Part shown: positions 2,263 through 21,831 of the stretch, in pieces | Position numbering within the stretch: position 1 is the stretch's first letter | Layout of the letters: each line of letters starts with the position of its first letter | DNA from: Dendrobates tinctorius | Taxonomy: Eukaryota | Assembly (NCBI RefSeq): GCF_039654945.1 | Contig: NW_027361684.1 | Location: 56,854,001-56,918,000 of the forward strand | DNA: 64,000 bases | Reading direction: 5' to 3' | Notes under the pieces: model-generated | What the model was told of the DNA's origin: nothing | Database searches by the model: none | Seen by the model: the letters and a program-made list of their open reading frames with translations, nothing else | Position numbers and translations under genes: made by a program

Positions 2263-2418
2263 TTAAAGGAAATACATAAGAGAGACAGAAGATTCGGCAC
2301 TGCTCCTTAACCCCCCAAAGCAGTTCCATGACTGCTATTCAAGTCGAAAATCACACATCTGGACCGACCGCCAAAATACAGTCAGAACGGGTGCTCAATC
2401 CAGAAAAGCAAACATGTA

Positions 2419-2662
2419 ATCTGATTTTGTACAAAAGAGAAAAAAAAGTGATGGCACTCACCGTTCTGTCGTGAAAATTCTTTATTAATTAAAAGGCATT
2501 GGCACGGGAGGAACGTACAGAGAGTGGACAACGGCCGTTTCACTCACTTGCACTTCAACGGGTCCTGATTCCCTCCCGTGCCAATGCCTTTTAATTAATA
2601 AAGAATTTTCACGACAGAACGGTGAGTGCCATCACTTTTTTTTCTCTTTTGTACAAAATCAG
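2419..2662. repeat. Inverted-repeat remnant, Penelope-like pLTR architecture
   Basis: About 90-bp AT-rich arms (2419-2510 vs 2570-2662) containing AATAAA. The spacer reads CCCGTTGAAG...GAAACGGCCG on the minus strand, a degenerate hammerhead-like core. Confidence 0.45.
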
Positions 2663-2883
2663 AATATTTAAAAGGTATTGTTGTAGAGTTACTACTCCTG
2701 TCCATATATTTTATCATAAATTACTGATGCCTAGTGTTGAGCATTCCGATACCGCAAGTATCGGGTATCGGCCGATATTAGCGGTATCAGAATTCCGATA
2801 CCGACTTCCGATACTTTTGTCATATCGGATTCCGGAATCGGAATCGGAAGTTCCCATCATGCTATGAGCCTGCTTGCTTTGAT

Positions 2884-3020
2884 TAAGCCAATGGGAATCC
2901 TCCGAAGTGTGGGCACATCCTGTTAGGCATGTAGGCATGTTAACTATTGGCATGGCTGTGATTGGCTGCCGAAATGATGTCATGATGCACTATAAAAGCC
3001 ACCGCAGCCGCCATTTCTGG
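2884..3020 (+). promoter_or_regulatory. Putative internal Pol II promoter of the hAT element
   Basis: CCAAT near 2889, two reverse CCAAT (ATTGG) near 2946 and 2961, TATAAAAG at 2991-2998, then a YY1-like GCCGCCATTT just downstream. Orientation matches the transposase. Confidence 0.5.
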
Positions 3021-3159
3021 TCACTCTGCTGTGAATTCAGTTAGGGACAGGCTGCTGTAGAAGACTGTGAGGGACAGTTAGAAATAGCGATTCCACCAAA
3101 CATCTAGTGCTTTACCCAGGCTACATAAACCACCACTGTAGCCTTCTTTGCCCTAGCAG

Positions 3160-3910
3160 CAGTGTTCACAGCTGTCTGCAAGGGCTGTGTGAGTGCAGCT
3201 CACGCTGTGGAGTGGGTCCTGCAGCCACGTCAGGCTGTAGGCCACCCAGTGTGATCACTGCTGCCTCATACATCTTTTATTTTTTGAGCTGCATTTTTTA
3301 CATAATTTCAATCTAGTGTGCTTCCATCCGTATCCATATACGTTGGTTGCAAACACTAGTAGTAGACAGCGGAGCCTTTCTGCAGCCTTTCAGTGCTAGT
3401 GTCCACTTTGCTGCACTGTTCACGGCTGTCTGAGAGGTCTCTGACTGTGTGTGAGTGCAGCTCACGCTGAGTAGTGTGTCCTGCAGCTACGTCTGGCTGT
3501 AGGACGCTCAGCGTGCGTCAGTGCCTCACACATATTTTTATTTGAGTGCAGCTCATTTTTTCTTCTATTAGTGTGCATCCATCCGTCTCCATCTACAGTG
3601 GTTGCAAACACTATATAGGAGTACACAGCGGAGCCTTTCTGCAGCCTGTCAGTGCCAGTGCCCACTTAGCTGCACTGTTGACGGCTGTCTGAGAGGTCTC
3701 TGACTGTGTGTGAGTGCAGCTCACGCTGAGTAGAGTGTCCTGCAGCTACGTCTGGTTGTAGGACGCTCAACGTGCGTCACTGCCTCACACATATTTGTCT
3801 TTGAGTGCAGCTCATTTTTTCTTCTCCTATTAGTGTGCATCCATCCGTATCCATCAACATTGGTTGGTTGCAAACACTATATAGGAGTAGATAGAGGAGC
3901 CTTTTTTTCT
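3160..3910 (+). repeat. Three diverged tandem copies of an about 255-260-bp unit in the hAT 5' region
   Basis: GTGTGAGTGCAGCTCACGCTG...TGCAAACACTA...GGAGCCTTT recurs, with units starting near 3163, 3416 and 3675. Confidence 0.8.
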
Positions 3911-4261
3911 GGCTTGTGCCCTGCCGGCGCAGCCAGATTAGTATTACCCAATTTTTTTGGAGCCTCATCTTTTGCATTGTAGGTTACCTGCCTGCATTGT
4001 AATAGCTCCAAAAAGTTGGTGATACTATCAGTTTCAATTCTTTGTTCACATACTTTGAGTTTGTTTCCAACAAAGAAACCACAAAAAAAGTTCACCAAAC
4101 ACTACATTTGGAACTTGTGTAGGCCACATCAGCTCCTATTAAAGTGTAGTCCACACACTTCATAAAATTAGTGTTTCTTGTACTTGTAACCAGCTGTTCA
4201 GGAATAAGCACACTAAGGCCCCCCTTTGTACTTTTCTGCCTATCTTAAGCAGTCTTGCAAG

Positions 4262-4576
4262 ATGAAGAAGGCAGGGAGTAAGGCGCGTGGGCGTGGGCGT
4301 GGAGTTTCAGCAGGGAGAGGACATGGGGATTCTGCAGGGAGAGGATGTGGGGATTCTACAGGTAGAGGACGTGGGGATTCTGGGCCTGCTGCGGGCACCA
4401 GTGGATCAGCATCCCCCAGTTTTAGCAGGCAACAGTCCTTTATGCGCAGCTTTGTAGGACCTCAACGTACCCCACTGCTGCGGGAGGAACAAATTGAAGC
4501 CGTTGTCGGATGGATGGCAGCTAACGCATCGACTTCAATTACTTCCGCATCCTCTCAGGGTCAGAGCACCGAATAG
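4262..4576 (+). CDS. RG-rich N-terminal segment of the hAT transposase, cut off by a single in-frame TAG
   Basis: ATG at 4262 is in the same frame as the 4607-7597 ORF, separated only by TAG at 4574-4576. Encodes MKKAGSKARGRGRGVSAGRGHGDSAGRG... from 21-bp repeats. Confidence 0.65.
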   Translation: MKKAGSKARGRGRGVSAGRGHGDSAGRGCGDSTGRGRGDSGPAAGTSGSASPSFSRQQSFMRSFVGPQRTPLLREEQIEAVVGWMAANASTSITSASSQGQSTE

Positions 4577-4606
4577 CAACCATCTGTCTCTTCACCACCT
4601 GCCAAA

Positions 4607-7597
4607 GTGCCCAGGCAGTCAGAGAGACATGGACAGGAGCCATCACAGTCTCTACTTCTGTTCTCGGAATCTGTTGGCTTGGAAAGAGGGGGCCAGCCAA
4701 GCAGCATTCCTGAATGTGAAGAAGAGGGAGTATGCAGTGATGCGCAACTTCTTTGTCCCTCTGAATCTGAAGAGGCGAGTGGGCCAGTGCCTATGGTCAG
4801 CACACCTCAGTACGCATCAGATGATGACGAGACTCAGTTGCCACTTTCTGGTGCGTACGGTGCTGGCGAGACAACCCCGGAGAAGCAGCTGTTTGAAGAG
4901 GGGAGGGAAGATGATGAGGTCCTTGACCCATCATGGCGTGAGGAACAGGAAGGTGGTGGGAGCAGCTCGGAGGAAGAGATTCCCCTACCGGCCAAAACAG
5001 GAGGCAGAGGGAGGGGGAAGACTTGGTTGCCTGTACCCTCCACTTCGGCACCCGTTAGGAGCATTCCTCATTCCAAAGGCAAACCGGGCGCTCCCAAGAG
5101 TTGCAGTGCGTGGTCCTTTTTTGACACAGTTGCAGATGACATTTGCTTTGTCAAATGCAAGCTGTGTCATCAGAGAGTCAAAAGAGGGAGAAATGTCAGC
5201 AACCTCAATACCACAAATATGTGGAAACATGTGCGCACCAAGCACGAGTTGGAGTTGCAGAGACACCCTGAAGACGTAGGCCAACGTACAGCACCACCTA
5301 CCACCTCTTCAGTTCGTGTTGGGGCCTCTTCCTCCAGCTCACACACTGCTGGTTCGGCTTCCTCACAGGATCGCCAAGGAAGAACCTCTGCCACTGTTGT
5401 CCGGAGACCCTGTCAGATTACACCCATAGCAGCACGTTCCCATCCATCACAGCCATCGGTAGCACAGGCATGGGATAAAAGGCGCCCTTACTCGGCAAAC
5501 CATCCCCGAGCACAGTCTCTGAATGCTGGCATTGCCAAACTTCTGGCAGTTGAAATGCTGTCATTCAGGCTGGTGGACACTGACACCTTCCGGGACTTAA
5601 TGGCATTGGCAGTCCCCCAATACAACGTGCCCAGCCGCTTTTATTTCAGCAGGCGAGCCGTCCCTGCCCTGCAGAAACATGTTGAGGGCAAAATAAAACA
5701 TGCGCTACTAAACGCCGTTAGTAGCAAGGTCCACCTGACCACCGATGCGTGGACCAGTAACCATGGACAGGGACGATACCTTTCCCTCACTGCCCACTGG
5801 GTCAATGTTGTGGAGCCGGGTACGGATCTGGAGAGTGGCGCTGTACGTGTTCTTCCAACGCCACGGATTGCAGGACTCCAGTCTGTACACATAGACTCCT
5901 CCTCCTACTCAAGTTCCTCAGAAACAGCAGAGCAGGAGCCTGTTACGACCGATATGAGCACAGCCGTGGCCAAACGTCAACAGGCTGTACTCAAATTAAT
6001 TTCTTTGGGGAATCGAAGCCACACAGCGCAGGAGCTCTGGAATGCTATCAAGCTGGAGAGCGATGTGTGGTTTGGGCCAGCGAATCTCCAGCCGGGCTTG
6101 GTAGTGTGTGACAATGGCCGAAATCTGGTGGCAGCTCTTGGCCTAGGCAACCTCACACACATCCCATGTCTGGCACATGTTCTTAACTTGGTCGTGCAGA
6201 GCTTTCTGAGGGACTATCCGGATCTTGATGCACTGTTGCACAAGGTCCGCATAGAGTGCGCTCACTTGCGACGTTCCAGCACGGCAAGATCGCGCCTCGC
6301 TGCTCTGCAGCGACGATTTGGCCTTCCGGAACATCGCATCATATGTGACCTACCCACCCGGTGGAATTCAACGTTACATATGTTGGAGCGGTTGTGTGAG
6401 CAGCAGGCAGCAGTTATGGAGTACCAGCTGCATCAGGCGCAAACAAGTCGCACTGTGCGCCGTTCACACTTCAGCACCATTGAGTGGGCCTCTATGAAGG
6501 ACATCTGCCTCGTTTTGCGTGCCTTCGATGAATCCACGCGGATGGCGAGTGCAGATGATGCACTAGTCAGCATGACTGTCCCCCTTATCTGCCTGCTTCA
6601 ACAAACACTGCAAGCACTATGGGATGAGGTTTCGGAAGAGGTGGAGGATGAGGAGTCCCAAATGCCATCTGCTTCTGGACAGTCTGCGCTACGTGTTTCC
6701 TCACAAAGGCCTAGGCAGGGGACACTTTGTGAGGAGGATGAGGAGGAGTCGATGGAGGAGGAAGACATCTCTCCAGAGGAGGGAGGTACACAAACCTCTA
6801 CTCAGTATGTACAGCGAGGGTGGGGTGATGCAGAGCAGGCCGAGGTCACGCCTCAAACAGGGGACAGCGGTTCTTTGGCAGTTGGGAGTCTGCAGCACAT
6901 GGTTGATTTCATGCTGCAGTGCCTGAGAAACGACCGCCGCATCGCCCACATTCTCGTCTCGGCTGATTATTGGGTGTACACCCTCCTAGATCCTCGCTAC
7001 CGGGACAGCGTACAAAGGCTCATACCAACGTTGAACCGGGAGCGTAAAATGCGGGAGTACGAAGAGTCACTGGTGCAGTCCATAATGTTTTCCATTCCAC
7101 CCGACAGCATTGTTGCTATTGCTTTAAAAAGCAGCTCTGTGCGTCGAGGCAGTGGAGGAAACTCTGCACAAAGAGGGAGCAGAGGCAGCGCCGCAGCACA
7201 AGGCAAGACCACTATGGCCCAAATGTGGCAAAGTTTTGTGTGTCCACCACAATTGTCTACAACATCAGCGACGCCTCGAGTCAGCAGGAGGCAACGCTTC
7301 CGTCAGATGGTGTCAGACTACATGTCTTGCCCTGTCGCTGTACTCCCAGATGGCTCTTCCCCCTTCAAGTTTTGGGTCTCTAAGCTGGATACATGGCCAG
7401 AGCTTAGCCAGTATGCATTGGAGGTGCTGGCTTGCCCTGCTGCCAGTGTATTATCGGAACGTGTCTTTAGTGCCGCAGGTGGTGTACTAACAGACCGTCG
7501 CACGCGACTATCTTCCGATAATGTTGACCGGCTGACTTTTCTGAAAATGAACAAGGCCTGGATCTCAAAAGACTTTGCCATTCCTCTTACAGACTAA
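4607..7597 (+). CDS. hAT transposase (ZBED-like: BED zinc finger, RNase H-like DDE core, C-terminal dimerisation domain)
   Basis: BED finger WSFF...CKLC...MWKHVRTKH. Catalytic motifs TTDAW, CDNGRN, CLAH (CxxH), TRWNS and SERVFS. The ORF-track start is GTG; the first in-frame ATG after the TAG is at 4793. Confidence 0.93.
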   Translation: MPRQSERHGQEPSQSLLLFSESVGLERGGQPSSIPECEEEGVCSDAQLLCPSESEEASGPVPMVSTPQYASDDDETQLPLSGAYGAGETTPEKQLFEEGREDDEVLDPSWREEQEGGGSSSEEEIPLPAKTGGRGRGKTWLPVPSTSAPVRSIPHSKGKPGAPKSCSAWSFFDTVADDICFVKCKLCHQRVKRGRNVSNLNTTNMWKHVRTKHELELQRHPEDVGQRTAPPTTSSVRVGASSSSSHTAGSASSQDRQGRTSATVVRRPCQITPIAARSHPSQPSVAQAWDKRRPYSANHPRAQSLNAGIAKLLAVEMLSFRLVDTDTFRDLMALAVPQYNVPSRFYFSRRAVPALQKHVEGKIKHALLNAVSSKVHLTTDAWTSNHGQGRYLSLTAHWVNVVEPGTDLESGAVRVLPTPRIAGLQSVHIDSSSYSSSSETAEQEPVTTDMSTAVAKRQQAVLKLISLGNRSHTAQELWNAIKLESDVWFGPANLQPGLVVCDNGRNLVAALGLGNLTHIPCLAHVLNLVVQSFLRDYPDLDALLHKVRIECAHLRRSSTARSRLAALQRRFGLPEHRIICDLPTRWNSTLHMLERLCEQQAAVMEYQLHQAQTSRTVRRSHFSTIEWASMKDICLVLRAFDESTRMASADDALVSMTVPLICLLQQTLQALWDEVSEEVEDEESQMPSASGQSALRVSSQRPRQGTLCEEDEEESMEEEDISPEEGGTQTSTQYVQRGWGDAEQAEVTPQTGDSGSLAVGSLQHMVDFMLQCLRNDRRIAHILVSADYWVYTLLDPRYRDSVQRLIPTLNRERKMREYEESLVQSIMFSIPPDSIVAIALKSSSVRRGSGGNSAQRGSRGSAAAQGKTTMAQMWQSFVCPPQLSTTSATPRVSRRQRFRQMVSDYMSCPVAVLPDGSSPFKFWVSKLDTWPELSQYALEVLACPAASVLSERVFSAAGGVLTDRRTRLSSDNVDRLTFLKMNKAWISKDFAIPLTD

Positions 7598-7662
7598 ATT
7601 AGTGGTTGGCAACTGTATCCAGGTCTGCTGGTGTGTTCATTTTTCTACCACCTGAACTATAA

Positions 7663-7953
7663 TTCTCATTTGCACAAGGAAAGACTAGAAGCAATGGGAT
7701 GAAACTGAATGGGAAGAGACACAGATTAGATATTAGAAAAAACTTTTTGACAGTTAGAGTGATCAATGAGTGGAACAGGCTGCCACGAGAAGTGGTGAGT
7801 TCTCCTTCAATGGAAGTCTTCAAACAGAGGCTGGACAGACATCTGACTGGGATGATTTAGCGAATCCTGCTTTGAGCAGGGGGTTGGACCAGATGGCCCA
7901 GGAGGTCCCTTCCAACTCTACGATTCTATGATTCTATGATTCTATGATTCTAT
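7663..7953 (+). mobile_element. 5'-truncated CR1 LINE 3' end inserted just after the transposase stop
   Basis: ORF2 C-terminal remnant (RLDIRKNFLTVRVINEWNRLP), GGTCCCTTCCAAC and an (ATTCTATG)n tail typical of CR1. Confidence 0.9.
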
Positions 7954-8104
7954 AATCCCTGTGCTTCAACACAGCCAGTTGTCGCTCAGATGTGTCGTCT
8001 GCACAGAGAAACACACTAGCTCCTGTGTTAGTGGGGTTCAGTAATGCCAGCTGATCCCCTGCTGTATGGACGGCAAAGTCACCAGCTCCATCAACATTCA
8101 AACC

Positions 8105-8509
8105 ACTACTGATTTTTAACCGTGTCCAACTTAGGTCTCTGGCTCCACTGTCTCTACTATTTCCCCTGACCTCCAACCCCGCCATCTACATCTCTGAAGT
8201 GGCGTCAGCACAATCTACACTTGTTCCTGTGGCTCAGTCCCATCAGTTTATCCCCTGATGTGTGTCCGGCAAGGTCTCCTGCTCTGTCCACATTCCCATA
8301 ACCAGTAGTGGGAATGAGGACAGAGCTGGCGAACTTGCCGGACAAACATCAGGGGATCAACTGACGGGACTGAGCACCAGTAACACAGGAACAAGTGTAG
8401 ATTGTGCTGACGCCACTTCAGAGATGTAGCTGGCGGGGTTGGAGGCCAGGGTAAATAGTAGAGACAGTGGAGCCAGAGGCCTAAGTGGAGCATGGTTAGA
8501 ATCAGTAGT
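8105..8509. repeat. Left long inverted repeat (about 200-bp arms, imperfect)
   Basis: ACTACTGATT... pairs with ...AATCAGTAGT, centre near 8300. Arms are diverged homologues of the 180-bp unit. Confidence 0.9.
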
Positions 8510-8562
8510 AGTCCTCAACCTCCATAAAAACCGCTGCCCATTGGCCTCTGCATGCGGCATGC

Positions 8563-10485
8563 GTAATCCTGGGCTCCAACAGTGTCAGTTGGTGTTCAGA
8601 AGTGTCGTCTCCACAGAGCCAAACACATTCGTTCGAGTGTTAGTGGGTTTCAGCACTGCCAGCTGTTCCCCTGCTGTGGAGATGGCAAGTCTCCTGCTGC
8701 CTTCACCTGCCAAAAACAACAGGCCCCAGCCTGCTCCTCGCCTAATCCTGGGCTCCAACAGCGTCAGTTGGTGTTCAGAAGTGTCGTCTCCACAGAGCCA
8801 GACACATTCGTTCAAGTGTTAGTGGGGTTCAGCACTGCCAGCTGTTCCCCTGCTGTGGAGATGGCAAGTCTCCTGCTGCCTTCACCTGCCAAAATCCAGT
8901 AGGCCCCAGCCTGCTCCTCGCCTAATCCTGGGCTCCAACAGCGTCAGTTGGTGTTCAGAAGTGTCGTCTCCACAGAGCCAAACACATTCGTTCAAGTGTT
9001 AGTGGGGTTCAGCACTGCCAGCTGTTCCCCTGCTGTGGAGATGGCAAGTCTCCTGCTGCCTTCACCTGCCAAAATCCAGTAGGCCCCAGCCTGCTCCTCG
9101 CCTAATCCTGGGCTCCAACAGCGTCAGTTGGTGTTCAGAAGTGTTGTCTCCACAGAGCCAGACACATTCGTTCGAGTGTTAGTGGGTTTCAGCACTGCCA
9201 GCTGTTCCCCTGATGTGGAGATGGCAAGTCTCCTGCTGCCTTCACCTGCCAAAATCCAGTAAGCCCCAGCCTGCTCCTCGCCAAATCCTGGGCTCCAACA
9301 GCGTCAGTTGGTGTTCAGAAGTGTCGTCTCCACAGAGCCAAACACATTCGTTCGAGTGTTAGTGGGTTTCAGCACTGCCAGCTGTTCCCCTGCTGTGGAG
9401 ATGGCAAGTCTCCTGCTGCCTTCACCTGCCAAAATCCAGTAGGCCCCAGCCTGCTCCACGCCAAATCCTGGGCTCCAACAGCGTCAGTTGGTGTTCAGAA
9501 GTGTCGTCTCCACAGAGCCAAACACATTCGTTCAAGTGTTAGTGGGTTTCAGCACTGCCAGCTGTTCCCCTGCTGTGGAGATGGCAAGTCTCCTGCTGCC
9601 TTCACCTGCCAAAATCCAGTAGGCCCCAGCCTGCTCCACGCCTAATCCTGGGCTCCAACAGCGTCAGCTGGTGTTCAGAAGTGTCGTCTCCACAGAGCCA
9701 AACACATTCGTTCAAGTGTTAGTGGGTTTCAGCACTGCCAGCTGTTCCCCTGCTGTGGAGATGGCAAGTCTCCTGCTGCCTTCACCTGCCAAAATCCAGT
9801 AGGCCCCAGCCTGCTCCACGCCTAATCCTGGGCTCCAACAGCGTCAGTTGGTGTTCAGAAGTGTCGTCTCCACAGAGCCAAACACATTCGTTCAAGTGTT
9901 AGTGGGGTTCAGCACTGCCAGCTGTTCCCCTGCTGTGGAGATGGCAAGTCTCCTGCTGCCTTCACCTGCCAAAATCCAGTAGGCCCCAGCCTGCTCCTCG
10001 CCAAATCCTGGGCTCCAACAGCGACAGTTGGTGTTCAGAAGTGTCGTCTCCACAGAGCCAAACACATTCGTTCGAGTGTTAGTGGGTTTCAGCACTGCCA
10101 GCTGTTCCCCTGCTGTGGAGATGGCAAGTCTCCTGCTGCCTTCACCTGCCAAAATCCAGTAGGCCCCAGCCTGCTCCTCGCCAAATCCTGGGCTCCAACA
10201 GCGACAGTTGGTGTTCAGAAGTGTCGTCTCCACAGAGCCAAACACATTCGTTCGAGTGTTAGTGGGTTTCAGCACTGCCAGCTGTTCCCCTGCTGTGGAG
10301 ATGGCAAGTCTCCTGCTGCCTTCACCTGCCAAAATCCAGTAGGCCCCAGCCTGCTCCTCGCCTAATCCTGGGCTCCAACAGCGTCAGTTGGTGTTCAGAA
10401 GTGTCGTCTCCACAGAGCCAAACACATTCGTTCAAGTGTTAGTGGGGTTCAGCAATGCCAGCTGTTCCCCTGCTGTGGAGATGGC
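8563..10485 (+). repeat. 180-bp tandem array A (about 10.7 units)
   Basis: AGGCCCCAGCCTGCTCC recurs every 180 bp from 8721 to 10341, with only a few substitutions per unit. Confidence 0.98.
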
Positions 10486-13400
10486 AGTCTCTCCTGCTGT
10501 CTCCGCATTCCAAAGACAGTAGGCCTCTGCCTACACCCTCCTATTTCCTGGGCTTCAACTCAGCCAGTTGTAGCTCGGAAGTGCCGTCCACATGGAAAGA
10601 GATACTTGCTCCCGTGTCTCAGTGGGGTTCAGTAACGTCAGCTGATCCCCTGCTGTGTGGATGGCAGTCTCTCCTGCTGTCACCTCATTCAAAATACAGT
10701 AGGCCTCTGCCTACACCCTCCTATTTCCTGGGCTTCAACACAGCCAGTTGTAGTTCGGAAGTGCCGTCCACACGGAAAGAGATACTTGCTCCCGTGTCTC
10801 AGTGGGGTTCAGTAACGTCAGCTGATCCCCTGCTGTGTGGATGGCAGTCTCTCCTGCTGTCACCTCATTCAAAATACAGTAGGCCTCTGCCTACACCCTC
10901 CAATTTCCTGGGCTTCAACACAGCCAGTTGTAGTTCGGAAGTGCCGTCCACACGGAAAGAGACACTTGCTCCCGTGTCTCAGTGGGGTTCAGTAACGTCA
11001 GCTGATCCCCTGCTGTGTGGATGGCAGTCTCTCCTGCTGTCACCACATTCCAAATACAGTAGGCCTCTGCCTACACCCTCCTATTTCCTGGGCTTCAACA
11101 CAGCCAGTTGTAGTTCGGAAGTGCCGTCCACACGGAAAGAGACACTTGCTCCCGTGTCTCAGTGGGGTTCAGTAACGTCAGCTGATCCCCTGCTGTGTGG
11201 ATGGCAGTCTCTCCTGCTGTCACCACATTCCAAAGACAGTAGGCCTCTGCCTACACCCTCCTATTTCCTGGGCTTCAACTCAGCCAGTTGTAGCTCGGAA
11301 GTGCCGTCCACACGGAAAGAGATACTTGCTCCCGTGTCTCAGTGGGGTTCAGTAACGTCAGCTGATCCCCTGCTGTGTGGATGGCAGTCTCTCCTGCTGT
11401 CACCTCATTCAAAATACAGTAGGCCTCTGCCTACACCCTCCTATTTCCTGGGCTTCAACACAGCCAGTTGTAGTTCGGAAGTGCCGTCCACACGGAAAGA
11501 GATACTTGCTCCCGTGTCTCAGTGGGGTTCAGTAACGTCAGCTGATCCCCTGCTGTGTGGATGGCAGTCTCTCCTGCTGTCACCTCATTCAAAATACAGT
11601 AGGCCTCTGCCTACACCCTCCAATTTCCTGGGCTTCAACACAGCCAGTTGTAGTTCGGAAGTGCCGTCCACACGGAAAGAGACACTTGCTCCCGTGTCTC
11701 AGTGGGGTTCAGTAACGTCAGCTGATCCCCTGCTGTGTGGATGGCAGTCTCTCCTGCTGTCACCACATTCCAAATACAGTAGGCCTCTGCCTACACCCTC
11801 CTATTTCCTGGGCTTCAACACAGCCAGTTGTAGCTCGGAAGTGCCGTCCACACGGAAAGAGACACTTGCTCCCGTGTCTCAGTGGGGTTCAGTAACGTCA
11901 GCTGATCCCCTGCTGTGTGGATGGCAGTCTCTCCTGCTGTCACCTCATTCAAAATACAGTAGGCCTCTGCCTACACCCTCCAATTTCCTGGGCTTCAACA
12001 CAGCCAGTTGTAGTTCGGAAGTGCCGTCCACACGGAAAGAGACACTTGCTCCCGTGTCTCAGTGGGGTTCAGTAACGTCAGCTGATCCCCTGCTGTGTGG
12101 ATGGCAGTCTCTCCTGCTGTCACCTCATTCAAAATACAGTAGGCCTCTGCCTACACCCTCCAATTTCCTGGGCTTCAACTCAGCCAGTTGTAGCTCGGAA
12201 GTGCCGTCCACATGGAAAGAGATACTTGCTCCCGTGTCTCAGTGGGGCTCAGTAACGTCAGCTGATCCCCTGCTGTGTGGATGGCAGTCTCTCCTGCTGT
12301 CACCTCATTCAAAATACAGTAGGCCTCTGCCTACACCCTCCTATTTCCTGGGCTTCAACACAGCCAGTTGTAGTTCGGAAGTGCCGTCCACACGGAAAGA
12401 GATACTTGCTCCCGTGTCTCAGTGGGGTTCAGTAACGTCAGCTGATCCCCTGCTGTGTGGATGGCAGTCTCTCCTGCTGTCACCTCATTCAAAATACAGT
12501 AGGCCTCTGCCTACACCCTCCAATTTCCTGGGCTTCAACACAGCCAGTTGTAGTTCGGAAGTGCCGTCCACACGGAAAGAGACACTTGCTCCCGTGTCCC
12601 AGTGGGGTTCAGTAACGTCAGCTGATCCCCTGCTGTGTGGATGGCAGTCTCTCCTGCTGTCACCTCATTCAAAATACAGTAGGCCTCTGCCTACCCCCTC
12701 CAATTTCCTGGGCTTCAACACAGCCAGTTGTAGTTCGGAAGTGCCGTCCACACGGAAAGAGACACTTGCTCCCGTGTCTCAGTGGGGTTCAGTAACGTCA
12801 GCTGATCCCCTGCTGTGTGGATGGCAGTCTCTCCTGCTGTCACCACATTCCAAATACAGTAGGCCTCTGCCTACACCCTCCTATTTCCTGGACTTCAACA
12901 CAGCCAGTTGTAGCTCGGAAGTGCCGTCCACACGGAAAGAGACACTTGCTCCCGTGTCTCAGTGGGGTTCAGTAACGTCAGCTGATCCCCTGCTGTGTGG
13001 ATGGCAGTCTCTCCTGCTGTCACCTCATTCAAAATACAGTAGGCCTCTGCCTACACCCTCCAATTTCCTGGGCTTCAACTCAGCCAGTTGTAGCTCGGAA
13101 GTGCCGTCCACATGGAAAGAGATACTTGCTCCCGTGTCTCAGTGGGGTTCAGTAACGTCAGCTGATCCCCTGCTGTGTGGATGGCAGTCTCTCCTGCTGT
13201 CACCTCATTCAAAATACAGTAGGCCTCTGCCTACACCCTCCTATTTCCTGGGCTTCAACACAGCCAGTTGTAGTTCGGAAGTGCCGTCCACACGGAAAGA
13301 GATACTTGCTCCCGTGTCTCAGTGGGGTTCAGTAACGTCAGCTGATCCCCTGCTGTGTGGATGGCAGTCTCTCCTGCTGTCACCTCATTCAAAATACAGT

Positions 13401-14820
13401 AGGCCTCTGCCTACACCCTCCTATTTCCTGGGCTTCAACACAGCCAGTTGTAGTTCGGAAGTGCCGTCCACACGGAAAGAGATACTTGCTCCCGTGTCTC
13501 AGTGGGGTTCAGTAACGTCAGCTGATCCCCTGCTGTGTGGATGGCAGTCTCTCCTGCTGTCACCTCATTCAAAATACAGTAGGCCTCTGCCTACACCCTC
13601 CAATTTCCTGGGCTTCAACACAGCCAGTTGTAGTTCGGAAGTGCCGTCCACACGGAAAGAGACACTTGCTCCCGTGTCTCAGTGGGGTTCAGTAACGTCA
13701 GCTGATCCCCTGCTGTGTGGATGGCAGTCTCTCCTGCTGTCACCTCATTCAAAATACAGTAGGCCTCTGCCTACTCCCTCCTATTTCCTGGGCTTCAACA
13801 CAGCCAGTTGTAGTTCGGAAGTGCCGTCCACACGGAAAGAGACACTTGCTCCCGTGTCTCAGTGGGGTTCAGTAACGTCAGCTGATCCCCTGCTGTGTGG
13901 ATGGCAGTCTCTCCTGCTGTCACCACATTCCAAATACAGTAGGCCTCTGCCTACACCCTCCTATTTCCTGGACTTCAACACAGCCAGTTGTAGCTCGGAA
14001 GTGCCGTCCACACGGAAAGAGACACTTGCTCCCGTGTCTCAGTGGGGTTCAGTAACGTCAGCTGATCCCCTGCTGTGTGGATGGCAGTCTCTCCTGCTGT
14101 CACCTCATTCAAAATACAGTAGGCCTCTGCCTACACCCTCCAATTTCCTGGGCTTCAACTCAGCCAGTTGTAGCTCGGAAGTGCCGTCCACATGGAAAGA
14201 GATACTTGCTCCCGTGTCTCAGTGGGGTTCAGTAACGTCAGCTGATCCCCTGCTGTGTGGATGGCAGTCTCTCCTGCTGTCACCTCATTCAAAATACAGT
14301 AGGCCTCTGCCTACACCCTCCTATTTCCTGGGCTTCAACACAGCCAGTTGTAGTTCGGAAGTGCCGTCCACACGGAAAGAGATACTTGCTCCCGTGTCTC
14401 AGTGGGGTTCAGTAACGTCAGCTGATCCCCTGCTGTGTGGATGGCAGTCTCTCCTGCTGTCACCTCATTCAAAATACAGTAGGCCTCTGCCTACACCCTC
14501 CAATTTCCTGGGCTTCAACACAGCCAGTTGTAGTTCGGAAGTGCCGTCCACACGGAAAGAGACACTTGCTCCCGTGTCTCAGTGGGGTTCAGTAACGTCA
14601 GCTGATCCCCTGCTGTGTGGATGGCAGTCTCTCCTGCTGTCACCTCATTCAAAATACAGTAGGCCTCTGCCTACTCCCTCCTATTTCCTGGGCTTCAACA
14701 CAGCCAGTTGTAGTTCGGAAGTGCCGTCCACACGGAAAGAGACACTTGCTCCCGTGTCTCAGTGGGGTTCAGTAACGTCAGCTGATCCCCTGCTGTGTAG
14801 ATGGCAAAGTCTCCTGCTGC
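10486..14820 (+). repeat. 180-bp tandem array B (about 24 units), in phase with array A
   Basis: AGGCCTCTGCCTAC recurs every 180 bp from 10521 to 14661. About 65% ungapped identity to the A unit by manual comparison. Confidence 0.98.
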
Positions 14821-14835
14821 CTACACAGTCGTACC

Positions 14836-15241
14836 ACTACTGATTTTTAACCGTGCTCCAATTAGGCCTGTGGCTCCACTGTCTCTCGTATTTCCCCTGT
14901 CCTCCAACCCTGCCAGTTACAGCTCCGAAGTGGCGTCTGCACAATCCACACTTGTTCCTGTGTTACAGGTGTTCAGTCCGGTCAGTTAATCCCCTGATGT
15001 GTGTCCGGCAATGTCGCCTGCTCTGTCCACATTCCCATTATGGGAATGTGGACAGAGCAGGCGACATTGCCGGACACACATCAGGGGATTAACTGACCGG
15101 ACTGAACACCTGTAACACAGGAACAAGTGTGGATTGTGCAGACGCCACTTCGGAGCTGTAACTGGCAGGGTTGGAGGACAGGGGAAATACGAAAATCAGT
15201 GAAGCCACAGGCCTAAGTGGAGCTTGGTTAAAATTAGTAGT
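14836..15241. repeat. Right long inverted repeat with about 153-bp perfect arms
   Basis: 14886-15038 is the exact reverse complement of 15040-15192 with a 1-nt spacer. Imperfect pairing extends to 14836/15241. Confidence 0.95.
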
Positions 15242-15800
15242 CTACAACCGATATTAAATTTTCTTCAATGCAGCCTCAGCCTGCTCCGTGCTTGTCCCTG
15301 GGCTTCAACACAGCCAGTTGTTGCTCGGAAGTGCCGTCTTCACAGAGTAAAACACTAGCTCCTGTGTTTGTGGGGTTCAGTAACGTCAGCTGTTCCCCTG
15401 CTGTTTTGATGGCAATCTGTCCTGCTGCCTCCCAATTGACAGCACATCAGGCCTCAGCCTGCTAAGTGCTTGTCCTGGGCTCCAACATCGCCAGTTGCTG
15501 CTCATAACTGACTTTGGCACGGGTACTCCCTCCTGCCCAGCTTGGTTCCAGCCCTGCCTGCTGTTTCCGGGAAGTGTCAATGTCAGTTTGCCACCCCAAG
15601 TTGCCATGTCGTGTTGCGGTTGGGTTAGCCGAGGCTAGGGTGCCAGCAGTTTAGGTGCTTCCTATGTGGACTGCGGGTTCTGGTAAGAAAGGCTTGTTCC
15701 ATAGTGCCAGTAGGACAAGCACCCCCTGTAGGACTGTGTGATTCGGTAACTGCGGCCAGCTTGCGGCATGCCAACTTTGCTTTTCAGGGGTAACTTCTGA

Positions 15801-16829
15801 TACCCCTCCGGGTTCCAGCACCGTCAGCTGGTTCTCGTCAGAGCCTTTGGCCTAGGTGCCTCCATCTCGGTATCCGAGTTCCGGCAACGTCTGCTGGTCC
15901 TTGGTAGTGCTTTGTAGCACAGGTACCTCCTGCTTAGTAACCGGGTTCCAGCACCGTCAGCTGGTCCTCGGTTGTGCCATTGGCTCTTATTCCTTCTGCT
16001 GCCCCTCCGGGTGCCAGCACTGTCAGCTGGTCCTCGCTATTTCCATTTGCTCTTGCAGCTTATGCTACCCCTCCGGGTTCCAGCACCGTCAGCTGGTTCT
16101 CGTCAGAGCCTTTGGCCTAGGTGCCTCCATCTCGGTATCCGAGTTCCGGCAACGTCTGCTGGTCCTTGGTAGTGCTTTGTAGCACAGGTACCTCCTGCTT
16201 AGTAACCGGGTTCCAGCACCGTCTGCTGGTCCTCGGTTGTGCCATTGGCTCTTATTCCTTCTGCTGCCCCTCCGGGTGCCAGCACTGTCAGCTGGTCCTC
16301 GCTATTTACATTTGCTCTTGCAGCTTATGCTACCCCTCCGGGTTCCAGCACCGTCAGCTGGTTCTCGTCAGAGCCTTTGGCCTAGGTGCCTCCATCTCGG
16401 TATCCGAGTTCCGGCAACGTCTGCTGGTCCTTGGTAGTGCTTTGTAGCACAGGTACCTCCTGCTTAGTAACCGGGTTCCAGCACCGTCTGCTGGTCCTCG
16501 GTTGTGCCATTGGCTCTTATTCCTTCTGCTGCCCCTCCGGGTGCCAGCACTGTCAGCTGGTCCTCGCTATTTACATTTGCTCTTGCAGCTTATGCTACCC
16601 CTCCGGGTTCCAGCACCGTCAGCTGGTTCTCGTCAGAGCCTTTGGCCTAGGTGCCTCCATCTCGGTATCCGAGTTCCGGCAACGTCTGCTGGTCCTTGGT
16701 AGTGCTTTGTAGCACAGGTACCTCCTGCTTAGTAACCGGGTTCCAGCACCGTCAGCTGGTCCTCGGTAGTGCCATTGGCTCTTGTTCCTTCTGCTGCCCC
16801 TCCAGGTGCCAGTACCGTCAGCTGGTTCA
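15801..16829 (+). repeat. 265-bp tandem array C (about 3.9 units), each unit with four copies of the shared 27-nt stem-loop
   Basis: TACCCCTCCGGGTTCCAGCACCGTCAGCTGG at 15801, 16066, 16331 and 16596. Confidence 0.95.
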
Positions 16830-17159
16830 AGAGGACAAAGAACAGGAAGACAACCACCAAGATGCAGAACAACAAGAGAGAGAAGACAAAGAAGCATAAA
16901 AAAAACAAAGCAGAAGAACATTAAGCATAAGACTAATACTCTGAGCAAATGATATTATCTTATTTATAAGCAGAAGACGACTAAGCAGTGTATGGGGGTG
17001 AGTCCGTTCCTCCTCGTGGTGCCCCTGGAAAAGGCCTGCTGCTGCAGGCCAAACTGAACGCGGACAAATCTTGTTGTAAATCTTTTGTGACAGGCAGAAC
17101 GGAAGGTGTAAACTTCTAACTTTTCTAGATAACAACTACAGGAATGCCTGACACAAACA

Positions 17160-17492
17160 AGAATATGATGAAGAAGAATAGGAAGAAGATGAAGAAGTTG
17201 AATATGTAGAATAATAATTGTTGAATAAGAAGAATATGAAGAATGTAAGAAAAGGAAGAAGAAGAAGAATGTAAAAAAAGGAAGTAGAAGAATTTAAAAA
17301 AGGAAGAAGAAGAAGAATGTAAAAAAAGGAATAAGAAGAAGAATGTAAAAAAAGGAAGAAGAAGAAGAATGTAAAAAAAGGAAGAAGAAGAAGAATGTAA
17401 AAAAAGGAAGTAGAAGAATGTAAAAAAAGGAAGAAGAAGAAGAAGAAGAAGGTAAAAAAGGGAAGAAGAATAAGAAAGAAGAAAGAAGAAGA
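17160..17492 (+). repeat. Purine-rich (GAA)n / AAGAATGTAAAAAAAGG minisatellite inside the hAT 3' end
   Basis: Repeated GAAGAAGAAGAATGTAAAAAAAG units. Confidence 0.9.
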
Positions 17493-18169
17493 CATACATG
17501 TCTGCCAAAATATAAATAAGGCTAACATAGTCAATATCTTTGTAACTCCTAACGTCTTTAAAAAAAAAGTTTAATTCCTGCTATTCCTTTTGATTGGGCT
17601 AAAACTCTATGGCTTTAATGTCTCCTCCACCTCCCACAATACATTCTACATTATTCTTAGTTGTTTTTCTTCATGTAGAATTAACCTACAAGGAAAGAAA
17701 GGGTTTTTTTTAATTCCGATATTTTGGCCCCATTGACTTGCATTGGTTACCGGTATCGGAATCGGCGATACCGATATTTTTTTTTAAGATCGGCCGATCC
17801 ATTCCGATCCGATATTTTCAAGTATCGGCTGGTATCGCTCAACTCTACTGATGCCATAAAGTACGAGTTTCAGAGCAGCCTCTCTAGGAGCCAGAACATA
17901 AGTCTACTTTTTAAGTCCATGCATAACATGGTCAGGTATTCACTTATATGGCTGAAATATAATGTTAGATTTCTCCAGAAAAAGCCTCTGTCAAAAAGGA
18001 AGCTGCAAACTTTTTAGAAAGTGGTTGTCTTCATGAGAAGATCCTTTTAGCATAGATGGTGTTAGCTACTGCTAACAACACAGAACATATAATATTTCAA
18101 GTAAATCTTTAGAAATGATATGGCATATGGATGCAGTTTGCGAGACATACCCTTTACATGCCTAAAGCT

Positions 18170-18320
18170 ATAATAATAATAATTTTATTTCTATAGCGCC
18201 GACATATTCCGCAGCACTTTACATTTCAGAGGGGACTTGTACAGATGATAGACATTACAGCATAACAATAATCACATAGATTATAACAGATACCAAGAGG
18301 AATGAGGGCCCTGCTCACAT
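18170..18320 (-). mobile_element. 3' tail fragment of an L2-type LINE or related SINE
   Basis: Minus strand reads ...TGTAAAGTGCTGCGGAATATGTCGGCGCTATAGAAATAAAA followed by an (ATT)n tail. Confidence 0.5.
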
Positions 18321-20326
18321 AATACTCTTCTTATAACATTTTTGAGATCTCTTGTCATATAAATTGCTTATTATTTTTCTACTTATAGCCCAGACCAGAC
18401 GTATAGCTGCTAAAGTCTATTGCCAGTTCACTGTACTTGCAAAAGTACATTTCTATCTTGCATCCACAGCCAACTGAGTGCCACAAGTATTACAGAGAAG
18501 TCCAGCTTACCTTCTGAGATCTTTCCATTTTCACATCAAATCGCCTGTGAATTTTGAGTGAAAGTTCTTACTCATGGTGTCGAATTGTAGACCGAGCATT
18601 ATATTTATACCCCCACCCCATTAAAGTTCCACCTACAATATTATATCTGACAAACCAGCAAAACGCTTGCTCGTCAGCTGAAACGATCTGTCGGTTTGAT
18701 CAAAAGATCACTGTTCTCGACAGAGAATTGCCCTGTGTAAACGAGAGATGAGCTGCCGAGAACAGTATGCGCACTGAACGAGGTCTTACTGATTGTTCAG
18801 TGACCATCCAAAGCGCGTTAGCATGTGTAAAAAGGCTATTAAATGACCACCGACCGGCAAACATGTTTCCAGAAGGTGGTCATTTAACGTTGCACATGGC
18901 TCAGTGTAAATGCACCCTTAAAGTATGAGCACACGCTAAGTATTTACTGCAAGAATTTCTGCATGGTTTCTGCATCTCTTGGCGGTAAAAATGTAGCATA
19001 AAATATGGGCATTTTTATTGCACTTTTTACTTGCCTTTTTGCTGCACATTTCTCCCCACTCATCAGTATGGGTGAAATCTGCTGCAATTAACATGCTACA
19101 GATTTATTGTGTGAACTTAGCCTATCTATGATTATTTACCTTATAGCTAGCTATATCAATGAACCACTGGGGATATCCTCGTTGCCCCAATCTAGTATAT
19201 ACTGTAACTTTGATAGGAAGAGGCAATGTTTCCAAAACAGAGTTATACATCGTTAAAAGATCCCAGAAGGTGCGCTGGACTTCATACACGTTCCTACTGA
19301 AAAAAAAATCTGTATTCAGAAGGGCAGGTGTCCGTCAATGCACCCATTCGAGAGAATCGGACTGACTATTTAGATGACGCTCTGCTCAAAGTTTGATCAG
19401 AGGGCCAGCATAGTGTCATCTGATTCTCTCAGATGAGGAAATGAGGGAAAAAAAATGTCTCTATCTTCTCCATTCTGTCAATGAGCAGAAATCGGACTCC
19501 ACTCAGATCTCTTCCGAGTGCAATTCGATGTTTCCCACGCACTCACTGACCTGCATGGCCAGGCGTAATGCAAACATCTGATCTAACTTGGTCATGCGGC
19601 GATTCCTATTCTTGAAAAGTGTCTGTCTGAAGGCCCCATACACTAACATTGCTCCAATGTTTTGTTGGATACGCTCATCTGCACCTGCCATAAAGGTGGA
19701 CCAGGAATTGTGGGAGATTCTACATAAATGCACTATATTCCAATGATTTTTCTTCTTACAAAGCATTGACAAATGTTACCAAGTCCCATATTTTTAGATA
19801 CTCAGGCTGAGCATGTTAAAAAAAAATTGGAAGTCTCTTGCAAAATTCTGAGCTTTCTGGACTCAAACATTTCCAGTGATAAGACTGACTGAAAACCATG
19901 CCGATTAAATCTGTTCTGGAAAATAAATTCCTTCAAGTCACAAAGATTAATTTGATCGGGCAGGAACTGATATATTACCATGGTCAACCTTTTAACGATC
20001 GCTAACGACACAGACAACCAACTCGCTGGGGGACACTCGGGAGTCTTCACCATGGAGTTAAGTTATGGACTTTCCACTGCACTGAAACATACGTGTACAG
20101 CTTCTGCTCCACATGATTGGCTACGTTACGTATGTATTGCAACATTTATAACGTTGACATTTTACCATCTATTGAATATTTCATCTTTTTTACTGGAAAC
20201 TTTCCTATGTAGCAGGAATTGAAATGTGACCATGTCTATTACAACTATGTGCATGCAGATTCCTTATGGAGTGTATTTTTATAGAAGCAGTAACATCATT
20301 TGATTACACAACTGTACACAGCTCTT

Positions 20327-21547: not shown

Positions 21548-21831
21548 TAGTGATGAGCAAGTGTGCCCATTACTCGAGATTTCCGAGCATGCTTGGGTGA
21601 TCTCTGAGTATTTTGGGTGTGCTCGGAGATTTAGTTTGTGTTGCCGCAGCTGCATGATTTGTGGCTGCTAGACAGCCTGAATACATCTGGATATTCCCTA
21701 ACAAACAGGCAACCCCCACATGTATTCAGGCTGTCTAGCAGCCACAAATCATGCAGCTGCGGCAACACAAACTAAATCTCTGAGCACTTCCAAATACTCT
21801 GAGAACACCCGAGCATACTCGCTCAATACTA
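21548..21831. mobile_element. Non-autonomous hAT MITE with termini related to the giant hAT
   Basis: TAGTGATGAGC...GCTCAATACTA termini, degenerate 8-bp TSD GTTCCGAT/CTTCCGAC, internal palindrome. Confidence 0.8.

What the first reader, a model, noticed from the sequence alone, without database searches (positions are those of the whole stretch)
8105..15241. The 180-bp arrays are bracketed by two fold-backs made of diverged array units, with arms that co-evolve
Seen in sequence: the arms align to the unit (GCCAGTT..GAAGTG.CGTC..CTTG.TCC.GTGT..GTTCAGT..TCAG.T.ATCCCCTG.TGTGTG..CACATTC). Differences between the two hairpins appear in both arms. The left has AGCACAATCTACAC/GTGTAGATTGTGCT and CTCTGAAG/CTTCAGAG; the right has TGCACAATCCACAC/GTGTGGATTGTGCA and CTCCGAAG/CTTCGGAG. 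The duplex has therefore been maintained since the hairpin duplicated. Inference: these could be hpRNA/endo-siRNA precursors partly complementary to the array, Dicer/Drosha processing boundaries that release the array RNA, or simply products of intra-palindrome gene conversion.
Basis: partly seen in the sequence, partly recalled or inferred. Interest (0 to 1): 0.78.

Follow-up and report, generated by a model that had tools for sequence, protein, structure and literature searches.

The report
Self-correcting palindromes inside a frog transposon
Two ~400-base palindromes, each one satellite repeat unit joined to its own inverted copy, sit at both ends of a 180-bp repeat array carried inside a 15-kb frog hAT jumping gene; their arms have changed together, most likely by DNA-level copying between arms rather than for an RNA function.

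Summary
There are two palindromes, at 8105-8509 and 14836-15241. They flank 34 copies of a 180-bp repeat. Their arms are diverged repeat units (71-75% identity, E about 1e-23) and lie in phase with the array.

The arms do change together. There are 12 sites where both arms of one hairpin differ from both arms of the other, against 2 arm-specific sites and 0 crossed (P about 8e-5). Seven of the 12 are transversions, so parallel CpG decay does not explain them. Arm-specific differences shared by both hairpins in the outer 25 nt show one palindromic ancestor that was later duplicated.

The context changes the reading. The whole region is cargo of a 15.1-kb hAT transposon (2732-17847), with an 8-bp target duplication and an intact transposase ORF.

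Related elements in Ranitomeya variabilis carry an unrelated 1-kb palindrome at the same repeat-unit boundary. Its arms also change together.

The best reading is an in-phase inverted duplication of a unit, kept symmetric by arm-to-arm gene conversion.

The small-RNA readings have no support:
- No exact match longer than 12 nt exists between a hairpin and the array.
- Mismatches show no G:U bias on either strand.
- No run is on record as RNA.

No target-site duplication of a stand-alone MITE flanks either hairpin. Earlier scan notes describe similar palindrome-plus-array modules in other hAT copies of this genome.

The parts
2732..17847 (+). Complete 15.1-kb hAT DNA transposon that carries everything below. 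TIRs at 2732-2742 (TAGTGTTGAGC) and 17837-17847 (reverse complement TAGAGTTGAGC). 8-bp target-site duplication CTGATGCC at 2724-2731 and 17848-17855.
   Evidence: The same ends occur in R. variabilis L001, with its own TSD GTGACCAC.
4607..7597 (+). Intact 996-aa transposase ORF (zf-BED plus hAT C-terminal dimerisation domain).
   Evidence: 79% aa identity to Ranitomeya variabilis ZBED-like P0001.
7664..7956 (+). 5'-truncated CR1-like LINE tail with (ATTCTATG)n, inserted between the ORF tail and the first repeat unit. It is not part of the module.
   Evidence: Homology to L001/L002 stops at 7663 and resumes at 7957. Other copies join these two points directly (loose ends at 15295).
7957..8099 (+). 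Outer flanking repeat unit (old 'U*' type), direct orientation, about 80% identical to the R. variabilis units.
8105..8509 (.). Left palindrome (HP-L). The direct arm 8105-8300 is the next array unit, in phase. Loop about 8301-8308. Inverted arm 8309-8509. 16 mismatches and an 8-nt deletion in the left arm.
8563..10450 (+). 180-bp array, subfamily A, about 10.5 units, 96-100% alike. A hybrid unit lies at 10363-10542.
10451..14830 (+). 180-bp array, subfamily B, about 24 units, 97-100% alike, 72-77% identical to A.
14836..15241 (.). Right palindrome (HP-R). Direct arm 14836-15038, centre 15039, inverted arm 15040-15241. The inner 153 bp are a perfect duplex (14886-15038 with 15040-15192). All mismatches lie in the outer 50 nt.
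15242..15500 (+). About 1.5 outer flanking units of the old U* type, direct orientation.
15790..16826 (+). 66/265-bp array that shares a core motif with the 180-bp units. It is conserved in R. variabilis L001 (82%).

Best explanation
The hairpins are not foreign insertions and not RNA genes.

Each hairpin is one unit of the transposon-borne satellite, in phase with the array, joined tail-to-tail to an inverted copy of itself. I infer that such a palindrome arose once, by fold-back or template switching during replication or during gap repair after hAT excision. It arose in the lineage of this hAT subfamily.

The module (about 30 nt of the preceding unit's tail plus the palindrome) was then duplicated within the heterogeneous array. 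This much is shown: both copies share arm-specific asymmetries.

Afterwards, substitutions in one arm were copied onto the other arm. The mechanism would be arm-to-arm gene conversion, hairpin-templated mismatch repair, or re-synthesis starting at the apex. The pattern is shown; the mechanism is inferred. This gives 12 both-arm differences between the copies and a perfect inner 153-bp duplex in the right copy. The outer about 25 nt escape and keep the ancestral asymmetries.

Between the two palindromes, two unit variants (A and B) later expanded and were homogenised by unequal exchange. That is why the array now looks 'bracketed'.

The whole structure moves as passive cargo of the hAT element.
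For: - Phase. The core motif lies at 8056+, 8252+, 8346-, 8668+, then every 180 bp to 14787+, then 14991+, 15078-, 15395+.
- Homology of arms to units.
- Site patterns 12:2:0, P = 8e-5, with 7 of 12 transversions and only 2 CpG-type.
- At 4 sites all four outgroup units agree with the right-hairpin state, so both left arms carry the derived base.
- Single origin. A 1-nt indel and two substitutions (8113|8502 = 14844|15234; 8122|8493 = 14853|15225) are arm-specific in both hairpins.
- Centre-out gradient in HP-R.
- The same behaviour in the unrelated palindrome FB-X of R. variabilis L002: 10 concerted sites. Of its 7 arm-wise columns, I read 1 as lying in the stem and the rest in the asymmetric 28-nt loop that both copies share.
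- No wobble bias among mismatches. HP-L has 4 G:U on the + strand, 3 on the - strand and 9 other. HP-R is similar.
- hAT context with TSDs in two species.
- Arm-to-arm gene conversion is an established property of palindromes (PMC8600007, PMC8981503; abstracts).
Against: - Gene conversion is inferred from a pattern in only two copies. Selection for pairing predicts the same split.
- The left hairpin's arms are now as diverged from each other (11%) as from the right hairpin (12-16%). Homogenisation is therefore episodic or has stopped there.
- Two sister lineages carry unrelated palindromes at the same unit boundary. A purely accidental origin explains this poorly, and it hints at a mechanistic or selective bias.
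- In four runs guessed to be RNA, the share of words held (0.45-0.54) is about what a missing hairpin would give. In the one laid here (X17) the hairpin has no contig although its flanks do. If these runs really are RNA, that could mean processing of a hairpin transcript.
Confidence: 0.62

Rival explanations
1. hpRNA / endo-siRNA trigger. The hairpins are transcribed as part of the transposon's long 3' region, fold into dsRNA of about 200 bp and are diced. The small RNAs act on other hairpin-bearing copies of the family (self-silencing) or on the array. Pairing would be kept by selection.
For: - The right hairpin holds a perfect 153-bp duplex, and both fold extremely well.
- Inverted duplications of a hAT element (maize Ac) are known to be transcribed into dsRNA and to produce silencing siRNAs (10.1101/2020.01.07.897926).
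- In the guessed-RNA run laid here (X17), contigs cover the unit before and the sequence after the hairpin but not the hairpin. The three sister runs hold a similar share of words.
- Most contigs carry G at 15167, opposite T at 14911. On + strand RNA that is a G:U intermediate of one concerted site.
Against: - No run is on record as RNA. Contigs cannot show level, strand or ends.
- The longest exact match of either hairpin to the array or to the rest of the element is 12 nt. Only other hairpins (23 nt) could be siRNA targets.
- Mismatches show no strand-specific G:U excess, and the left hairpin has 9 non-wobble mismatches plus an 8-nt deletion.
- Twelve double substitutions, 7 of them transversions, are far easier by conversion than by compensatory selection.
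- Rfam hits are generic palindromic miRNA models, on both strands, below gathering score.
Confidence: 0.15
2. The palindrome-array module is a selected or mechanistically favoured structural part of this hAT family. Palindromes at unit boundaries stall forks or break, and repair between them drives expansion and homogenisation of the enclosed array (a 'satellite nursery'). Alternatively they serve the element in some other cis role.
For: - R. variabilis relatives (86% nt identity in the ORF) have an unrelated 1-kb palindrome at the same unit boundary. It lies after the first unit behind the ORF and again after the 166-bp x 19.7 array.
- The units between the palindromes are 96-100% homogenised, while the outer units are of the old type.
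- Scan notes on other pieces of this genome describe palindrome plus 180-bp array repeated three times (s1-383065, s1-389182; not checked by me).
Against: - Only three elements were compared.
- Duplication of a [palindrome + units] module by ordinary unequal exchange yields the alternation with no role for the palindrome.
- In L001 the arrays next to the palindromes are tiny, 2-3 units.
- Nothing tests causality.
Confidence: 0.13
3. The hairpin is an independent fold-back MITE that inserted twice into the array, or two such elements that mobilise the DNA between them as a composite.
For: - It is compact and symmetric, with terminal ACTACTGA...TCAGTAGT.
- Its sequence is high-copy in a 2-Gb DNA contig set: 6507 contigs at >=92% on 14600-15790.
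- A scan note reports a derived fold-back MITE for another hAT family of this genome (s1-386129).
Against: - There is no target-site duplication: flanks are TTCAAACC / AGTCCTCA and GTCGTACC / CTACAACC.
- The direct arm is itself the next array unit, in phase, and homologous to the units. The hairpin is therefore array-derived and in situ.
- Homology between the two copies extends about 30 nt into the preceding unit's tail.
- Summed contig depth of the hairpin is similar to neighbouring internal parts of the hAT, not far above them (a weak measure).
- No other copy lies in the 64-kb window.
Confidence: 0.05
4. Each palindrome formed independently from an already diverged direct unit, so the 'co-evolution' only reflects two separate inverted duplications.
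For: It also predicts that the arms group within each hairpin (12 concerted sites).
Against: - Both hairpins share the same centre, the same outer ends and three arm-specific differences: a 1-nt indel and two substitutions. A freshly copied arm could not carry these.
- FB-X likewise keeps a shared asymmetric loop and a shared mismatch.
Confidence: 0.05

Closest known systems
Arm-to-arm gene conversion in genomic palindromes (primate and mouse sex-chromosome palindromes; PMC8600007, PMC8981503, 10.1101/800185)
   Same: Arms of one palindrome stay more alike than homologous arms of a duplicated or orthologous palindrome. Differences between copies appear on both arms, and the spacer is exempt.
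   Different: The scale is about 200-bp arms with a 1-10-nt spacer, against 10 kb to 1 Mb arms with long spacers. The location is inside a mobile element and a satellite array, not around testis genes. Homogenisation is incomplete (89-96%, against >99.9%). It shows a centre-out gradient that suggests hairpin or fold-back repair rather than classical inter-arm recombination.
Transposons with internal tandem repeats that seed satellites: Tetris foldback element of Drosophila virilis (PMC4079207); DTC84 MITE of Donax trunculus (PMC3879986)
   Same: A DNA transposon carries modular internal tandem repeats of about 160-220 bp. These expand into kb-size satellite-like arrays, and the modules occur in rearranged forms.
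   Different: Here the carrier is an autonomous hAT with an intact transposase. The arrays are not inside the TIRs. The palindromes are internal, made of the repeat unit itself, and alternate with the arrays.
Inverted duplications of hAT elements that give silencing hairpin RNA (maize Ac/Ds composite insertions, 10.1101/2020.01.07.897926)
   Same: An inverted duplication of hAT-internal sequence that would fold into long dsRNA if transcribed.
   Different: In maize, dsRNA, 21-24-nt siRNAs and silencing were all shown, and the duplicated parts are TIRs and transcribed Ac sequence. Here nothing is shown at the RNA level. The duplicated part is a non-coding repeat unit with at most 12 nt of exact identity to anything else in the element.
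FB-X, the 1-kb palindrome of the Ranitomeya variabilis sister elements (L002 13565-14577 and 17867-18520; L001 several pieces)
   Same: It sits at the same unit boundary, before and after the main array. It is duplicated as unit tail plus palindrome, and its arms change together (10 concerted sites).
   Different: It has no sequence homology to the window's hairpins or to the repeat unit. Its arms are about 500 nt, with a conserved asymmetric 28-nt loop.

Membership tests
hAT DNA transposon (context of the finding) | 8-bp target-site duplication flanking short terminal inverted repeats | tested here: met
   CTGATGCC on both sides. TIR TAGTGTTGAGC / TAGAGTTGAGC. L001 has the same TIR with TSD GTGACCAC.
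hAT DNA transposon (context of the finding) | Transposase with BED zinc finger and hAT C-terminal dimerisation domain | tested here: met
   PF02892 at 33 bits and PF05699 at 52.6 bits, both above cut-off.
Palindrome under arm-to-arm gene conversion | Arms group within each palindrome rather than by side, across duplicated palindromes of single origin | tested here: met
   12 concerted, 2 arm-wise, 0 crossed sites, P = 8e-5. Shared arm-specific indel and substitutions prove single origin.
Palindrome under arm-to-arm gene conversion | GC-biased direction of the fixed changes | tested here: inconclusive
   Only 4 sites can be polarised: 2 AT>GC, 1 GC>AT, 1 neutral.
hpRNA / endo-siRNA locus | Long inverted repeat able to fold as one RNA | tested here: met
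   -346 and -402 kcal/mol, z = -30 and -43.
hpRNA / endo-siRNA locus | Transcription through the hairpin and 21-23-nt small RNAs from both arms | not testable with these tools
   No holder run is on record as RNA. Only contigs were available. The guessed-RNA run X17 has no contig on 14840-15200.
hpRNA / endo-siRNA locus | Extended complementarity to a target (here claimed: the array) | tested here: not met
   Longest exact match to the array or to the rest of the element is 12 nt.
Stand-alone MITE / fold-back transposon | Own target-site duplication and insertion into unrelated sequence | tested here: not met
   No TSD. The direct arm is the in-phase next unit of the array.
Stand-alone MITE / fold-back transposon | Copies dispersed outside the parent element | tested here: inconclusive
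   None elsewhere in the window. Contig depth is comparable to neighbouring hAT-internal segments. A genome-wide search was not possible.
Known miRNA/snoRNA family (Rfam) | Score at or above the family's gathering threshold with default filters | tested here: not met
   0 hits at gathering. With permissive filters only generic palindromic miRNA models appear, on both strands, at 20-53 bits against 68-90 needed. There is also a gapped SNORD17 match at 45.2 against 45, which I take to be an artefact of the palindrome.

The most novel reading that the evidence does not exclude
Palindromes at repeat-unit boundaries are a recurrently acquired, functional part of this frog hAT family. Two sister lineages would have gained unrelated palindromes independently at the same boundary, and both keep their arms paired. 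The reason would be that the palindromes either drive expansion of the enclosed satellite, or give hairpin RNA that is processed and regulates the family.
Probability: 0.12. Interest if true: 0.75.

Novelty: new variant of a known kind. Interest (0 to 1): 0.42.

Why it matters
The locus gives a small, datable example of concerted evolution of palindrome arms at the 200-bp scale, inside a mobile element. The evidence has clear parts: a single origin, a later duplication, 12 both-arm changes, and a centre-out gradient.

It also shows that an autonomous vertebrate hAT can carry and spread a structured 'satellite nursery' of arrays alternating with palindromes. That bears on how satellites and hairpin loci are seeded in the giant genomes of poison frogs.

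The unrelated palindrome at the same boundary in a sister lineage is the one feature a specialist would want followed up.

As it stands, the finding is an ordinary DNA-level process in an unusual setting. It is not a new RNA system.

Tried and rejected
- Rfam at gathering score found nothing in the window. Permissive scans of both hairpins gave only generic palindrome-like miRNA models on both strands.
- I tried to fetch other hairpin copies through the 79-aa ORF that spans the right hairpin. No protein in the collection shares words with it.
- More distant hAT relatives (53% aa; D. tinctorius, P. terribilis, a second R. variabilis family; L003-L005) share neither units nor hairpins. The R. 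imitator locus L006 holds only a truncated 5' part. P0024 gave no DNA.
- Parallel CpG decay as the cause of the both-arm changes is rejected. Only 2 of the 12 are CpG-type and 7 are transversions.
- Independent formation of the two palindromes is rejected because of the shared arm-specific asymmetries.
- The 1462-aa ORF through array B is treated as a by-product of a 180 = 3 x 60 period with near-identical units. It was not pursued.
- Findings look-ups by sequence and by a long word list were blank.
- Contig depth ratios (hairpin against flanks) differ between the DNA run and the smaller runs. The tool warns that depth per contig cannot rank parts, and the run kinds are unknown, so I draw no conclusion.
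Full report
**1. What is there**

TRF finds a 180-bp array of 34.3 copies at 8642-14819.

The right inverted repeat has arms 14845-15038 and 15040-15233. They are 194 nt long, 96% complementary, with 1 nt between them. The left one has arms 8114-8231/8384-8501 (92%) and 8222-8298/8309-8385 (87%). The two hairpins align over their whole length at 91% column identity.

As single strands they fold at -346 and -402 kcal/mol, with z = -30 and -43. In the right hairpin the inner 153 bp (14886-15038 with 15040-15192) pair perfectly, and all mismatches lie in the outer 50 nt. The left hairpin has 16 mismatches spread along the stem and an 8-nt deletion in its left arm.

**2. The arms are array units, in phase**

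BLAST aligns the right hairpin's left arm to B units at 71% over 178 nt (E 2e-23). It aligns to the flanking unit 7957-8099 at 75% over 143 nt (E 7e-24).

A conserved core motif maps at 8056+, 8252+, 8346-, 8668+, then every 180 bp up to 14787+, then 14991+, 15078-, 15395+. Each hairpin is therefore the next unit in direct orientation, plus about 20 nt, followed by its inverted copy. After that the array resumes at the spacer.

Neither hairpin has a target-site duplication. The array between them consists of two subfamilies. A runs from 8563 to about 10450 (10.5 units). B runs from about 10450 to 14830 (24 units). Each is 96-100% homogeneous, and they are 72-77% identical to each other. Outside the hairpins lie units of an older type, at 7957-8099 and 15242-15500. 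These resemble each other and are about 80% identical to units in Ranitomeya variabilis.

**3. Do the arms co-evolve?**

In a four-arm alignment, 158 columns are invariant. In 12 columns both arms of one hairpin differ from both arms of the other. Two columns are arm-wise and none is crossed. Singletons number 8, 8, 1 and 5. P(>=12 of 14 | 1/3) = 8e-5.

Seven of the 12 are transversions and only two are CpG transitions. Parallel methyl-CpG decay of mirrored sites is therefore not the cause. At four sites all four outgroup units carry the right-hairpin base. The left hairpin thus acquired the derived base on both arms.

Both hairpins share arm-specific differences in the outer 25 nt. These are a 1-nt indel, T/A at 8113|8502 and 14844|15234, and G/A at 8122|8493 and 14853|15225. 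A newly made inverted copy could not carry such differences. The ancestor was therefore already a palindrome, it was duplicated, and the inner about 170 bp then changed in concert.

**4. Conversion or selection on RNA?**

- The remaining mismatches show no strand-specific wobble excess. The left hairpin has 4 G:U on the + strand, 3 on the - strand and 9 non-wobble.
- The left arms are now 11% apart, almost as far as from the right hairpin at 12-16%.
- The longest exact match of either hairpin to the array or to any other part of the element is 12 nt. Between the two hairpins it is 23 nt. Small RNAs from the hairpins could therefore not act on the array by siRNA-type pairing.
- Rfam gives nothing at gathering score. 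At permissive settings it gives only generic palindromic miRNA models on both strands.
- Twelve double changes are much easier to obtain by copying one arm onto the other.
- The centre-out gradient fits hairpin-templated repair or fold-back re-synthesis.
- Arm-to-arm conversion is well established for larger palindromes (PMC8600007, PMC8981503).

**5. Context: a hAT transposon**

The ORF 4607-7597 (996 aa) has zf-BED and hAT dimerisation domains. The element runs from 2732 to 17847. Its TIRs are TAGTGTTGAGC / TAGAGTTGAGC, it has ATCGG-rich subterminal repeats, and an 8-bp duplication CTGATGCC flanks it.

The closest proteins are from dendrobatid frogs. The best is R. variabilis at 79% aa. A complete R. 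variabilis relative (L001 11700-23673) has the same TIR and its own TSD, GTGACCAC.

A scan note had suggested this 15-kb hAT (s1-382800). I checked the ends myself.

**6. Comparative surprise**

The R. variabilis elements (86% nt identity in the ORF) carry related units behind the ORF, but not the window's hairpins.

Instead, L002 has the following layout:
- one unit at 13406-13535;
- a 1-kb palindrome 'FB-X' (arms 13579-14057 and 14086-14564, 95% complementary, 28-nt loop);
- a 166-bp x 19.7 array at 14625-17815;
- a second FB-X at 17867-18520, cut by another insertion.

FB-X has no homology to the window's hairpins or to the units. It starts 33-38 nt after the unit's GGCAA motif; the window's hairpins start about 26 nt after it. 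The spacer that follows FB-X (TTGCTCCAATTAGGC) is the outer part of the window's hairpin arm (GTGCTCCAATTAGGCC).

The two FB-X copies are 87% alike, while the arms within each are 93-95% alike. There are 10 concerted sites. Of the 7 arm-wise columns, I read 1 as lying in the stem and the rest in the asymmetric loop that both copies share. Concerted evolution of arms is thus a property of palindromes in this family whatever their sequence. That favours a DNA-level process.

Unrelated palindromes at the same boundary in two lineages remain only partly explained. This supports the minority reading that palindromes are favoured there.

**7. Abundance and RNA**

Twenty runs from six studies of one organism hold the stretch. 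None is on record as RNA.

In a 2-Gb DNA contig set, 6507 contigs match 14600-15790 at >=92%. The hairpin's summed depth is of the same order as that of neighbouring internal parts of the element. The family is therefore high-copy, and nothing shows that the hairpin has amplified on its own.

Loose ends show three things: other copies with a left-type loop, arrays without a hairpin, and copies in which the ORF tail joins the first unit directly.

One run guessed to be RNA (X17) has contigs on the unit before and on 15235-15790 after the hairpin, but none on 14840-15200. Its three sister runs hold a similar share of words, 0.45-0.54. Run kinds are unknown and contig depth is unreliable, so this is only a lead.

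Most contigs have G at 15167 opposite T at 14911. The window has the fully paired T:A. The difference also appears in the run guessed to be DNA (X2), so it is probably not RNA editing.

**8. Comparison with known systems**

Transposons that carry internal tandem repeats and seed satellites are known: Tetris (PMC4079207) and DTC84 (PMC3879986). Inverted duplications of the hAT element Ac produce silencing hairpin RNA in maize (10.1101/2020.01.07.897926). Arm-to-arm conversion is known from sex-chromosome palindromes.

The present case combines these features: unit-derived, self-homogenising palindromes alternate with arrays inside an autonomous vertebrate hAT.

Earlier scan notes report similar modules in other hAT copies of this genome (s1-383065, s1-389182, s1-376906). 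I could not read those sequences.

**9. Verdict**

The gene-conversion reading is supported. The small-RNA readings are unsupported but not excluded. The stand-alone MITE reading is not supported.

Noticed in passing
window 7664-7956: A 5'-truncated CR1-like LINE tail ending in (ATTCTATG)n sits inside the hAT, between the ORF tail and the first repeat unit. Contigs from other copies join these two points directly, so the LINE entered this copy or sub-lineage later.
   Followed up: partly
L002 13565-14577 and 17867-18520; L001 17008-17093, 17873-18432, 18799-18904, 20736-21813: FB-X is a 1-kb palindrome of Ranitomeya variabilis hAT relatives, unrelated to the window's hairpins. It has a conserved asymmetric 28-nt loop and arms that change together. 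In L001 it is flanked head-to-head by inverted and direct repeat units, which makes a larger palindrome.
   Followed up: partly
L002 about 18508-19400: The second FB-X is interrupted by another insertion. The insert is bounded by an inverted pair, GGTTACTATCCAGCGTGCT ... AGCACGCTGGATAGTAACC, and holds an open reading frame. It was not identified.
   Followed up: no
window 10455-14843 (+): A 1462-aa ORF runs through 24 near-identical B units. This is expected when a 180-bp (3 x 60) unit happens to be open in one frame. It was not searched on its own, and nothing indicates a gene.
   Followed up: no
window 2417-2511 / 2572-2666 and 21612-21699 / 21707-21794: Two further near-perfect hairpins lie outside the hAT: 95-nt arms at 99%, and 88-nt arms at 91%. 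The first lies just upstream of the hAT's 5' end. They are probably other fold-back or MITE-like elements.
   Followed up: no
window 15167 (pairs with 14911): The window has A, giving a T:A pair. Nearly all public contigs that match this arm have G, giving a T.G mismatch, including those of the run guessed to be DNA (X2). This looks like an intermediate state of one of the 12 concerted sites, a CpG site.
   Followed up: partly
window 14969-15101 (+): With permissive filters, Rfam SNORD17 scores 45.2 bits against a gathering score of 45, with the 238-position model squeezed into 133 nt across the palindrome apex. I take this to be an artefact of the perfect hairpin.
   Followed up: partly
window 3186-3904 and L002 8557-9778: A 259-261-bp tandem repeat lies between the 5' end and the transposase ORF, both in the window and in the R. 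variabilis relative. The two show only weak sequence similarity. The element thus has arrays on both sides of the ORF.
   Followed up: no
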